From positions 64,914,001-64,978,000 of the forward strand of contig NC_086386.1 of NCBI RefSeq assembly GCF_036588685.1: DNA of 64,000 nt, in the 5' to 3' direction. Below are positions 28,227 to 61,208 of this stretch, in pieces. The notes under the pieces are model-generated. The model was not told the origin of the DNA. It made no database searches and was given only the letters and a program-made list of their open reading frames with translations. Origin of the DNA: Mytilus trossulus (taxonomy: Eukaryota). Every line of letters starts with the position of its first letter. Position 1 is the first letter of the stretch. Made by a program: the position numbers and the translations under genes.

Positions 28227-28282
28227 GAGCATCACCGAAGAGACATTTATTGTTGAAACAGGCACCTGGTGCAGAAAAATTG
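28227..28282 (+). ncRNA. Solitary degenerate type I hammerhead ribozyme relic of the same family as the 59.6-60.8 kb array
   Basis: gcatca-cCgaaga-gac(atttatt)gtt-gaaa-caggca-cc-tggtgc; 42/56 identical to the array unit. Confidence 0.75.
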
Positions 28283-59200: not shown

Positions 59201-59571
59201 TTCATCACCATGACAACGGTTGTGTTGATGCTTAATTGTTTGTTTGCCATTGGTTAAGACCACATTAAATTAGTTCTACAATTGATAAGCATTGTATTCA
59301 TACAAATTATATATCAAATGTGCTCATTATTTTTGTAAATTTTGCAACAAGTTACAAAGTACAAAGTTGAGTATATAAACCAATTTGTAAAATTCATTGA
59401 ATTTTAAGAATTTATTTGTATTGGTCAATACAATATAGGCCAAATTATATACTTCATGTTCATTATTAAATGACACAAATGTGATTTTGTACTTTTTTTT
59501 ATTTATTAAAAGCCTTGTACATCATCAGGGATATCGTCTGCAGAACTTTAAAATAAATCATAGTTTGAACA

Positions 59572-60789
59572 ATTCCTTTCACGAATTTGGCTATGCTTTT
59601 TGGACCTTTTGGATTGTAGCTCTTCATCTTTTGTATATGCTTTGGATTTCAAGTGTTTTGGCCACGGGCATCACTGGGGAGACGTGTATTGTCGAGGTGC
59701 GCATCTGGTGCAGGAAAATTGGTGCCGTTGATTTGATTACTACCACTGGGTCGATGCCTCTGCTGGTGGACTATTAGTCCCAGAGGGTATCACCAGCCCA
59801 GTAGCCAGTACTTCGGTACTGGCATGAAAATACGGATTTTTTGTGTTATATAAATTTGCTGTTAACAAATCTTAGAAATTATTATAAATTAAGGAATGTA
59901 TCTCCCTCATGCAAAGCTCTGATTCCTTTCACGAATTTGGCTATGCTTTTTGGACCTTTTGGATTGTAGCTCTTCATCTTTTGTATATGCTTTGGATTTC
60001 AAGTGTTTTGGCCACGGGCATCACTGGGGAGACGTGTATTGTCGAGGTGCGCATCTGGTGCAGGAATATTGGTGCCGTTGATTTGATTACTACCACTGGG
60101 TCGATGCCTCTGCTGGTGGACTATTAGTCCCCGAGGGTATCACCAGCCCAGTAGCCAGTACTTCGGTACTGGCATGAAAATATGGATTTTTTGTGTTATT
60201 AAAATTTGCTGTTAACAAATCTTAGAAATTATTATAAATTAAGGAATGTATCTCCCTCATGCAAAGCTCTGATTCCTTTCACGAATTTGGCTATGCTTTT
60301 TGGACCTTTTGGATTGTAGCTCTTCATCTTTTGTATATGCTTTGGATTTCAAGTGTTTTGGCCACGGGCATCACTGGGGAGACGTGTATTGTCGAGGTGC
60401 GCATCTGGTGCAGGAAAATTGGTGCCGTTGATTTGATTACTACCACTGGGTCGATGCCTCTGCTGGTGGACTATTAGTCCCCGAGGGTATCACCAGCCCA
60501 GTAGCCAGTACTTCGGTACTGGCATGAAAATACGGATTTTTTGTGTTATTAAAATTTGCTGTTAACAAATCTTAGAAATTATTATAAATTAAGGAATGTA
60601 TCTCCCTCATGCAAAGCTCTGATTCCTTTCACGAATTTGGCTATGCTTTTTGGACCTTTTGGATTGTAGCTCTTCATCTTTTGTATATGCTTTGGATTTC
60701 AAGTGTTTTGGCCACGGGCATCACTGGGGAGACGTGTATTGTCGAGGTGCGCATCTGGTGCAGGAAAATTGGTGCCGTTGATTTGATTA
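59572..60789 (+). mobile_element. Non-LTR retrozyme array: 350-bp unit x ~3.5, one hammerhead per unit
   Basis: Exact 350-bp period. Each unit has a minimal type I hammerhead fold and a structured 3' half, including the cUUCGg hairpin gccagtac-ttcg-gtactggc (59804-59823). Tandem hammerhead-bearing units of this size are the known architecture of animal non-LTR retrozymes. Confidence 0.85.
59668..59711 (+). ncRNA. Type I hammerhead ribozyme with A-to-G mutated core (identical copies at 60018-60061, 60368-60411, 60718-60761)
   Basis: Helix I gcatca/tggtgc, core ctgggga, helix II gac/gtc, gagg, palindromic helix III tgcgca, and an AUC cleavage triplet ending at 59705. Confidence 0.85.
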
Positions 60790-61208
60790 AGTTTAGCTAA
60801 AATATCCTCATGAGGGAGGAGTGATTAAACCCATGGAATTATTGTCACATTTTCAGAGCTTCATGAAATTTGGTATAAAGCTGTATGTGAGAAAATTGAG
60901 AATGGGAATGTGTCAAAGAGACAACCCTACCTACATGTAAGAGCAGAAAACAGCTCATGCCACTTATGGGTCTCCAACACAGCGAGAGTATCCTGCACTT
61001 GAAGGCAGGCTTTTATCTTGCCCCTAACACGAATGTACTAGTTCAGTGAAATGGATGTCCGATCAAACTCCGAAACATATAAATGAACTAAATATTTTAA
61101 AAACATATAAATGAACTAAACTTTTTAAAAACATACAAGACTTACAAAGACTTAAGAGGCGCCAGACTAAGGACAGGTGCAAAAATGGGGCATGGTTAAA
61201 CATATTAA

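What the first reader, a model, noticed from the sequence alone, without database searches (positions are those of the whole stretch)
59572..60789. Retrozyme array fixed with A-to-G hypermutation: possible genomic fossil of an ADAR-edited circular RNA
Seen: all four hammerheads keep intact helices I, II and III and the AUC site. The invariant core adenosines are G (CUGANGA->CUGGGGA = A6G; GAAA->GAGG = A14G and A15.1G). Against the solitary relative at 28227-28282, 8 of 14 differences are A(solo)/G(array) and none are the reverse. The relic at 1766-1792 also has tttcaaAtAttt..gAgc where the array has tttcaaGtGttt..gGgc. The G states are identical in every copy, while the copies differ at a few other sites. 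Known: retrozymes make circular RNAs and are thought to integrate as tandem copies by rolling-circle reverse transcription; ADAR-generated inosine is copied as G. Inference: one hyperedited circRNA was retrotransposed, writing RNA edits into germline DNA and killing the ribozyme. This would point to ADAR acting as a restriction system against retrozymes.
Basis: partly seen in the sequence, partly recalled or inferred. Interest (0 to 1): 0.92.

Follow-up and report, generated by a model that had tools for sequence, protein, structure and literature searches.

The report
RNA-edited dead retrozyme array, mussel-type genome
A 3.5-unit tandem array of a hammerhead-ribozyme retroelement carries 13 clustered A-to-G changes, identical in every unit and absent from the rest of its family; they inactivate the ribozyme core and look like RNA editing copied back into germline DNA.

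Summary
Window 59572-60789 is a 350-bp x 3.5 tandem array of a family with at least 3,900 hammerhead copies in this 1.3-Gb genome.

Compared with 83 other insertions, the array differs by 13 A>G changes. There are no T>C, G>A or C>T changes. All 13 lie in unit positions 24-153 and are identical in all four units. The other insertions carry A at these sites in 93-100% of cases. The changes include hammerhead core positions A6, A14 and A15.1.

Private changes in the other insertions show a flat spectrum (A>G 19, T>C 20), so Poisson P for 13 is about 1e-16.

I found one more insertion of this kind, at C13:37249350, with a duplicate on C40. It has 18 A>G in positions 10-142 and none in its other half. 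No T>C-hypermutated copy turned up.

Best reading: ADAR-type hyperediting of the sense retrozyme RNA over a roughly 140-nt duplex, then reverse transcription of one edited monomer into a multi-unit array.

No read data could be obtained. Editing, circularity and loss of cleavage are inferred, not shown.

The parts
59572..60789 (+). Whole retrozyme array: three full 350-bp units (59572-59921, 59922-60271, 60272-60621) plus a 168-bp terminal partial unit (60622-60789)
   Evidence: TRF. BLAST to the family yardstick gives unit positions 1-350 three times, then 1-168. The 3' end at unit position 168 is the end shared by nearly all family insertions.
59668..59711 (+). Hammerhead 1 (type I, short palindromic helix III), core mutated: A6G, N7 A>G, A14G, A15.1G, helix II A>G (A-U becomes G-U). 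Predicted cleavage site 59705|59706
   Evidence: Sequence reading and comparison with family copies
60018..60061 (+). Hammerhead 2, same mutated core. Predicted cleavage site 60055|60056
60368..60411 (+). Hammerhead 3, same mutated core
60718..60761 (+). Hammerhead 4, same mutated core (in the terminal partial unit)
59595..59724 (+). Hyperedited domain, unit 1: A>G at 59595, 59616, 59633, 59653, 59655, 59667, 59677, 59678, 59684, 59696, 59697, 59713, 59724 (unit positions 24-153)
59945..60074 (+). Hyperedited domain, unit 2: the same 13 sites (59945 ... 60074)
60295..60424 (+). Hyperedited domain, unit 3: the same 13 sites
60645..60774 (+). Hyperedited domain, unit 4 (partial unit): the same 13 sites
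28227..28282 (+). Old solitary fragment of the same family (unit positions 95-150, 84% identity). Its own hammerhead is decayed (U4C, U16.1C). It has A at the sites that are G in the array

Best explanation
This is a dead copy of a mussel-type non-LTR retrozyme, a 350-nt tandem repeat with one type I hammerhead per unit.

Proposed sequence of events:
1. One sense-strand retrozyme RNA was hyperedited (adenosine to inosine) over a duplex of roughly 140 nt within unit positions 1-168. About a third of the adenosines there were converted.
2. The most likely duplex partner is an antisense transcript of one of the many 5'-truncated genomic copies, which consist mostly of that same domain.
3. The edited RNA was reverse transcribed, with inosine read as G, and inserted by the family's usual target-primed route. 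That route gives a fixed 3' end at unit position about 168.
4. All 3.5 units carry the same 13 G, so they were copied from one edited unit-length template. That means either repeated passes round a circular RNA or repeated re-copying of one monomer.
5. The edits hit A6, A14 and A15.1 of the hammerhead core, so the array should no longer self-cleave or make circles.

Shown: the substitution pattern, its privacy to this array, its strand and domain restriction, its identity across units, and a second event of the same kind.

Inferred: the enzyme, the duplex in trans, circularity of the template, and loss of catalysis.
For: - 13 A>G and no other transition against 39 units of 13 arrays.
- A in 93-100% of 57-79 other insertions at each of the 13 sites. 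The nearest relatives differ at only 4-6 of 337 other positions and have 0 of 13 G.
- Private to the array: the G-state 34-mer occurs only 4 times in 1.3 Gb.
- Clustering: 13 of 43 A in unit 1-168 against 0 of 51 A in 169-350, P=1.2e-5. Span permutation P=5e-5.
- Background is flat. In 83 other insertions the private changes are A>G 19, T>C 20, G>A 19, C>T 24, and none has more than 2 private A>G. Poisson P(>=13) = 1.4e-16.
- Second event at C13:37249350, with a copy on C40: 18 A>G in positions 10-142 and 0 of 45 A in its 207-349 part, P=1.8e-7. It shares 8 sites with the array against 5.4-6 expected, P=0.08-0.15, which fits an independent event.
- No hammerhead with 3 or more T>C was found in two T>C probes.
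- No helix longer than 9 bp in the predicted circular fold, and pairing probability does not separate edited from unedited A. Short insertions cover unit positions 1-166 in 54-87% of cases against 13-27% for 169-350.
- Nearly all insertions end at unit position 166-172 with variable 5' ends. That is 34 nt past the cleavage site, so the template was not a self-cleaved linear monomer primed at its end.
- The within-array variants are 5 positions, each in a single unit, with none shared between units.
- Literature: a mussel retrozyme family of about 5,000 type I hammerheads in 350-390-bp repeats makes abundant circRNA, and the authors raised RNA editing as one explanation for clone heterogeneity (PMC7229834). 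Bivalves including Mytilus galloprovincialis have ADAR-family gene models, and mollusc ADAR1 hyperedits overlapping sense/antisense viral RNA (PMC6651903).
Against: - Editing, expression and circularity are untested.
- Neighbour preference is weak: 5' G at 3 of 23 edited against 6 of 16 unedited A (P=0.12), and no 3' G enrichment.
- No dsRNA partner was demonstrated. The trans-duplex idea rests only on the domain boundary and on fragment abundance.
- An array of about 29 kb (roughly 80 units) on C8 also has an A6G core in nearly every unit. Dead-core arrays can therefore become large, probably by DNA-level amplification. This weakens the argument that identical units must come from rolling-circle copying.
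- Target-site duplication at this insertion is weak: a 5-mer AGTTT offset by 5 nt.
- Two non-A>G changes, T164G and an AC/CA swap at 294-295, are unexplained by editing. They fit the background divergence of about 1.4%.
- ADAR genes were not searched for in this genome.
Confidence: 0.58

Rival explanations
1. The RNA-editing origin is the same, but there was no rolling-circle copying. Either a short edited insertion was later amplified into 3.5 units at the DNA level (unequal crossing-over, slippage, conversion), or the array was copied from an already edited donor array that is missing from this assembly.
For: The array of roughly 80 units at C8:65007844-65036488 shares an A6G core in nearly all units. 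This shows that arrays unable to make circles still expand. Arrays of many sizes exist in the family.
Against: Unequal exchange needs at least two repeats to start, and these would already have had to carry identical edits. The five within-array variants are each confined to one unit, with no nested sharing, as expected for units born together. No donor with the G state exists in the genome.
Confidence: 0.22
2. A DNA-level, strand-biased mutation cluster (for example error-prone repair synthesis at WA motifs) hit one unit, followed by homogenisation.
For: 10 of 13 edited A in the array have a 5' A or T, which also fits a polymerase-eta-like WA preference.
Against: The density is 30-43% of A over about 140 nt, with no accompanying changes at T, G or C. 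The same element domain and the same element strand were hit at two unlinked loci, which have different genomic surroundings. Over both events combined the 5' A/T preference disappears (P=0.52). No T>C counterpart was found.
Confidence: 0.07
3. Reverse-transcriptase misincorporation (dC opposite template A), for example under a skewed nucleotide pool, during synthesis of the first ~170 nt of cDNA.
For: In both events the hypermutated domain is the part next to the element's 3' end, where first-strand synthesis starts.
Against: Errors made during copying would differ between units, yet all four units share the same 13 sites. By my own recollection of the literature, which I did not check here, reverse-transcriptase hypermutation yields G>A or U>C through G:T wobble mispairs, not A>G.
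Confidence: 0.03
4. Assembly or sequencing artefact.
For: None specific. Reads could not be inspected.
Against: The pattern is repeated four times in the array. A similar pattern is present on two separate contigs for the second locus, whose flanks have diverged to 94.7% identity.
Confidence: 0.01

Closest known systems
Metazoan non-LTR retrozymes, in particular the Mytilus galloprovincialis family (Cervera & de la Pena 2020, PMC7229834)
   Same: Tandem repeats of about 350 bp with low G+C (38%). One type I hammerhead per unit without loop-loop tertiary contacts. Thousands of copies (3,910 pattern matches here against about 5,000 reported). Arrays range from dimers to large multimers.
   Different: This array's hammerhead core is mutated at three invariant adenosines, so it is a dead derivative. 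Sequence identity with the published family could not be checked, because no sequence is held in the paper's supplement. The species of this genome is not known to me.
RNA-edited retrotransposons fixed in mammalian genomes (Knisbacher & Levanon 2015, pmid 25722083; reference seen in PMC6669771 and PMC5850729, content recalled from my own knowledge)
   Same: Clusters of A>G on the element's sense strand relative to its family, explained by ADAR editing of the RNA intermediate before reverse transcription.
   Different: Here the host is a mollusc and the element is a ribozyme-bearing, circRNA-forming, non-coding retroelement. The edits are replicated identically across tandem units. They destroy a catalytic RNA rather than a coding or promoter sequence.
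ADAR hyperediting of sense/antisense viral RNA in molluscs (Rosani et al. 2019, PMC6651903)
   Same: Low-frequency hyperediting is confined to stretches where transcripts of both strands overlap. This gives a precedent for active ADAR1 in bivalves.
   Different: That work sees editing in RNA only. Here the marks are in germline DNA, and the overlapping antisense transcript is only inferred.
Penelope-like elements, the proposed autonomous partners of animal retrozymes (PMC7229834; bioRxiv 10.64898/2026.07.22.740005)
   Same: Insertion as partial tandems, variable 5' truncation, a fixed 3' end, and variable and sometimes long target-site duplications (about 29 bp in L061 and about 14 bp in L019).
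   Different: No reverse transcriptase or endonuclease is encoded here. The link to a particular Penelope-like element was not tested.

Membership tests
Metazoan non-LTR retrozyme | Short tandem repeat (150-450 bp), low G+C, no LTR, primer-binding site or polypurine tract, no coding capacity | tested here: met
   350-bp period, 3.5 copies. Base composition T122, A94, C67, G67, which is 38% G+C.
Metazoan non-LTR retrozyme | A type I hammerhead with intact catalytic core in every unit | tested here: not met
   Family copies have CUGAAGA...GAAA...AUC with helices I-III. This array has CUGGGGA...GAGG in all four units. Rfam models detect neither form. The array is a dead descendant of the family, not an active member.
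Metazoan non-LTR retrozyme | Transcription, self-cleavage and accumulation as circular RNA | not testable with these tools
There is no cleavage assay.
Metazoan non-LTR retrozyme | Dispersed insertions with retrotransposition hallmarks | tested here: met
   At least 3,910 hammerhead copies on both strands. Insertions end at unit position 166-172 with variable 5' ends. Target-site duplications occur in some insertions.
ADAR (A-to-I) hyperediting footprint | Strand-specific excess of A>G over all other changes | tested here: met
   13 A>G against 0 other transitions. Second locus 18 A>G. The background is flat.
ADAR (A-to-I) hyperediting footprint | Dense clustering within a stretch of about 100-200 nt | tested here: met
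   Unit positions 24-153 and 10-142. 30-43% of the A in unit 1-168 are changed, and none elsewhere in the unit.
ADAR (A-to-I) hyperediting footprint | Neighbour preference (5' G depleted, 3' G favoured) | tested here: inconclusive
   5' G at 3 of 23 edited against 6 of 16 unedited A, P=0.12. 3' G is not enriched.
ADAR (A-to-I) hyperediting footprint | A long double-stranded RNA substrate | tested here: inconclusive
   No helix longer than 9 bp in cis. A trans duplex with antisense truncated copies is plausible but was not observed.
ADAR (A-to-I) hyperediting footprint | A>G mismatches between RNA and DNA of the same animal; ADAR present | not testable with these tools
   No reads. ADAR-family genes are reported for bivalves (PMC6651903).
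Rolling-circle (monomer-templated) reverse transcription product | Template-borne variants identical in every unit, with later variants each confined to one unit | tested here: met
   All 13 G are present in all four units. Five single-unit positions. This feature is also compatible with DNA-level amplification.
Rolling-circle (monomer-templated) reverse transcription product | Insert ends not at the ribozyme cleavage site | tested here: met
   The 3' end is at unit position 168, 34 nt beyond the cleavage site at 134|135.

The most novel reading that the evidence does not exclude
The edits act as a natural barcode. They would show two things:
- Multi-unit retrozyme arrays are written in one event from a single unit-length, most likely circular, RNA.
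- Retrozyme RNA meets antisense transcripts of its own truncated copies in the germline, forming a defined duplex over unit positions about 1-168. The host's dsRNA-editing enzyme then attacks this duplex and occasionally sterilises the element.

That would be the first genomic evidence for both the rolling-circle insertion model of animal retrozymes and an ADAR-retrozyme interaction.
Probability: 0.35. Interest if true: 0.8.

Novelty: new variant of a known kind. Interest (0 to 1): 0.62.

Why it matters
Animal retrozymes are thought to spread through circular RNA, but the copying step has never been observed. The evidence so far is the tandem layout and the abundance of circles.

An RNA-level mark that is identical in every unit of one insertion, and absent from all other copies, is direct genomic evidence for two things. 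The insertion passed through RNA. All its units came from one unit-length template.

The sharp limit of the edits to one half of the unit, seen at two unlinked loci, points to a specific double-stranded region of the RNA in vivo. It can be looked for in existing RNA-seq data.

The finding also bears on the sequence heterogeneity of cloned mussel retrozyme circles. Its authors left that unexplained and named RNA editing as one candidate.

The evidence does not show that editing is an effective defence, because the events are rare.

Tried and rejected
- Rfam scans of the window (gathering thresholds), of the array (E<=10) and of three canonical loci (E<=1) gave no hammerhead hit. The models miss this short-helix-III form, so motif calls are manual.
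- A paralogous empty site could not be used to define the insertion. The upstream flank is single-copy.
- No inverted family copy lies near the array that could form a local hairpin.
- A cis-structure explanation for the edited domain was rejected. The longest predicted helix is 9 bp, and pairing probability is no higher for edited A.
- Common ancestry of the two hyperedited loci was considered. 8 shared sites against 5.4-6 expected (P=0.08-0.15) does not require it.
- I searched the supplement of PMC7229834 for the hammerhead sequence, to tie this family to the published one, and found nothing.
- Earlier notes of the scan gave no other record of A>G hypermutation.
- The 1766-1792 'relic' was rejected as evidence because it is too short.
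- For tabulation I used a column majority of 39 real genomic units as a yardstick. It is nearly identical to real copies such as the first unit in L004. I propose no repaired version of the array.

Full report
**What is there**

Window 59572-60789 is a tandem array with a 350-bp period, 3.5 copies and 99% identity between copies. It consists of three full units and a 168-bp terminal partial unit.

Each unit holds a type I hammerhead layout that can be read directly from the sequence. In unit 2:
- helix I is GCAUCA (60018-60023) paired with UGGUGC (60056-60061);
- the core is 60024-60030;
- helix II is GACG/UGUC around a 5-nt loop;
- then come GAGG, a two-pair helix III closed by GCGC, and AUC before the predicted cleavage site at 60055|60056.

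The helix III segment is palindromic (AUGCGCAU in family copies). That is the arrangement that lets such motifs act as dimers, as described for salamander repeats (PMC7229834).

Rfam finds no hammerhead in the array, nor in canonical family copies. The motif call is therefore manual.

**The family**

The window lies at C14:64914001-64978000 of a 1.30-Gb assembly. The unit has hundreds of near-full-length matches on all large contigs.

A pattern for the 34-nt hammerhead that tolerates A or G at each adenosine matches 3,910 times, 1,987 forward and 1,923 reverse.

These features match the retrozyme family described in the mussel Mytilus galloprovincialis:
- unit size, low G+C (38%) and copy number;
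- a type I hammerhead without loop-loop contacts;
- about 5,000 hammerheads in 350-390-bp repeats;
- circRNA at up to 1% of total RNA (PMC7229834).

I could not confirm sequence identity with that family, and I do not know the species.

**Testing the observation against the family**

I aligned the four units of the array with 39 units from 13 other arrays. The array differs from all of them by:
- 13 A>G;
- one C>G (unit position 143);
- one T>G (164);
- an AC/CA swap (294-295);
- one site that is polymorphic in the family.

There is no T>C, G>A or C>T.

In a wider sample of 83 other insertions, each of the 13 sites is A in 93-100% of copies. Position 143 turns out to be a common C/G polymorphism. 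The nearest relatives differ from the array at only 4-6 of 337 other positions and carry none of the 13 G.

The G-state hammerhead occurs four times in the genome, allowing up to two mismatches. All four are in this array.

That fragment is an old decayed copy, however, and the family comparison is the real test.

**More than chance**

All 13 changes lie in unit positions 24-153.
- 13 of 43 adenosines in positions 1-168 are changed, against 0 of 51 in 169-350 (P=1.2e-5).
- A permutation of the span gives P=5e-5.
- Private substitutions in the 83 other insertions are spread evenly: A>G 19, T>C 20, G>A 19, C>T 24, out of 189 in 18,963 nt. No insertion has more than two private A>G.
- At that background rate the array expects 0.35 private A>G. 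P(>=13) is 1.4e-16.

**A second event**

I probed the genome with the hammerhead pattern with G fixed at one of four adenosines. The probes returned only one other hammerhead with many A>G. It is at C13:37249350, with an identical copy on C40:3272845.

That insertion spans unit positions 207-350 followed by 1-166.
- It has 18 A>G, all in positions 10-142.
- It has none among the 45 adenosines of its 207-349 part (P=1.8e-7).
- The C40 copy carries the same 18. Its flanks are 94.7% identical to those of the C13 copy, so the event predates that split.
- Eight sites are shared with the array, against 5.4-6 expected by chance (P=0.08-0.15). The two events can be independent.

Two matching probes for T>C found no hammerhead with more than two T>C.

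The process is therefore recurrent, acts on the sense strand of the element, and is confined to the same half of the unit at two unlinked loci. A process acting on the element's RNA fits this. One acting on chromosomal DNA does not.

**Which RNA process**

A-to-I deamination by an ADAR-type enzyme is the known process that converts a large share of adenosines on one strand of a duplex RNA and is read as G by reverse transcriptase (established knowledge).

The neighbour test has the expected sign but lacks power: 5' G at 3 of 23 edited against 6 of 16 unedited adenosines, P=0.12.

The predicted fold of the circular unit has no helix longer than 9 bp. Edited adenosines are no more paired than others. 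The substrate was probably not the RNA's own fold.

The domain limit suggests a partner in trans.
- Nearly all family insertions end at unit position 166-172 and are truncated at variable 5' positions.
- As a result, short genomic fragments cover positions 1-166 in 54-87% of cases but positions 169-350 in only 13-27%.
- Copies lie on both strands in equal numbers.
- Antisense transcripts of such fragments would pair with exactly the edited domain.

This step is inference. Mollusc ADAR1 has been shown to hyperedit stretches where sense and antisense viral transcripts overlap. ADAR-family gene models are listed for M. galloprovincialis (PMC6651903).

**How the array was built**

The same 13 G are present in all four units. 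The only differences between units are five positions, each changed in a single unit with none shared.
- Errors made during copying would differ from unit to unit, which rules out reverse-transcriptase error.
- Independent editing of a multimeric transcript would also differ from unit to unit.
- So the units descend from one edited unit-length template.
- The shared 3' end at position 168 lies 34 nt beyond the cleavage site (134|135). The template was therefore not a self-cleaved linear monomer primed at its end.

A circle copied more than three times round fits all of this, and it is the model proposed for these elements (bioRxiv 10.64898/2026.07.22.740005).

The alternative is DNA-level amplification after insertion. 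An array of about 29 kb on C8 shares an A6G core in nearly all of its roughly 80 units. That shows dead-core arrays can grow, so I rate the rolling-circle step at about 0.6, given that editing occurred.

**Consequences for the ribozyme**

The helices are kept: the helix II change turns A-U into G-U, and A15.1G leaves a G-U pair. A6, A14 and A15.1 are invariant positions whose substitution abolishes or greatly reduces cleavage in classical mutagenesis. This is established knowledge and was not tested here. The array should not release or circularise monomers.

**What is not supported**

- I found two hyperedited insertions among about 3,900 hammerhead copies. The four probes would catch roughly 80-90% of hammerheads carrying four or five edits, by my own combinatorial estimate.
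- The rest of the family shows no A>G excess.
- Rare collateral editing explains the data equally well.

**Comparison with what is known**

The element family is known. Fossil A>G clusters from edited retroelement RNA are known in mammals (Knisbacher & Levanon 2015; the reference was verified, the content is from my own knowledge). The authors of the mussel study raised RNA editing as one possible cause of circRNA heterogeneity but did not analyse it.

In the paper searches made here, I found no report of hyperediting marks in a retrozyme, of their identical replication across tandem units, or of a defined edited domain.

**Limits**
- No sequencing reads could be consulted.
- The census of insertions is a sample: 13 arrays chosen by similarity, plus about 60 loci from the first 31 Mb of C1.
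- ADAR genes were not searched for in this genome.

The earlier notes of this scan record many retrozyme arrays elsewhere in this genome. None records A>G hypermutation other than this same stretch.

Noticed in passing
G000 C13:37249107-37249416 (L096:1257-1566) and C40 (L097:1295-1568): A second hypermutated retrozyme insertion. It spans unit positions 207-350 plus 1-166, with 18 A>G confined to positions 10-142. It is present on two contigs whose flanks are 94.7% identical (haplotig or old duplication).
   Followed up: yes
G000 C8:65007844-65036488: An array of about 29 kb and roughly 80 units. Nearly every hammerhead has A6G plus a helix II-loop A>G (60 exact copies), and a few units have A at position 6. 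This is a large array with a dead core. Irregular spacings (350, 689, 700, 1038) hint at higher-order structure. It could not be fetched.
   Followed up: partly
Loci L004-L095: Nearly all insertions of the family end at unit position 166-172 (…TTTTATTA), 34 nt downstream of the hammerhead cleavage site. Their 5' starts are variable. Some have long target-site duplications (about 29 bp in L061, about 14 bp in L019).
   Followed up: partly
Genome-wide, e.g. C1:13043409, C2:9172438, C3:9600302: A dispersed subfamily (about 25 loci) whose hammerhead differs from the main form by two A>G (helix I CA to CG, helix II GACA to GACG). Both changes are compatible with pairing.
   Followed up: no
L075 = G000 C1:19258600-19266800: A 105-nt retrozyme fragment (unit positions 63-167) recurs at 769-bp spacing. 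It has apparently been captured inside a larger tandem repeat.
   Followed up: no
L004, L020, L024 and window 59400-61000: Rfam hammerhead models fail to detect even the intact canonical hammerheads of this family (short palindromic helix III). Rfam-based screens would miss thousands of copies.
   Followed up: partly
window 61073-61135: A small 28-bp tandem repeat (2.2 copies, 94% matches) 280 bp downstream of the array.
   Followed up: no
window 60790-60830: The downstream flank contains CCTCATGAGGG, which resembles the unit's own …CTCCCTCATGCAAAG… tail. This may be a remnant of another family fragment at the target site.
   Followed up: no
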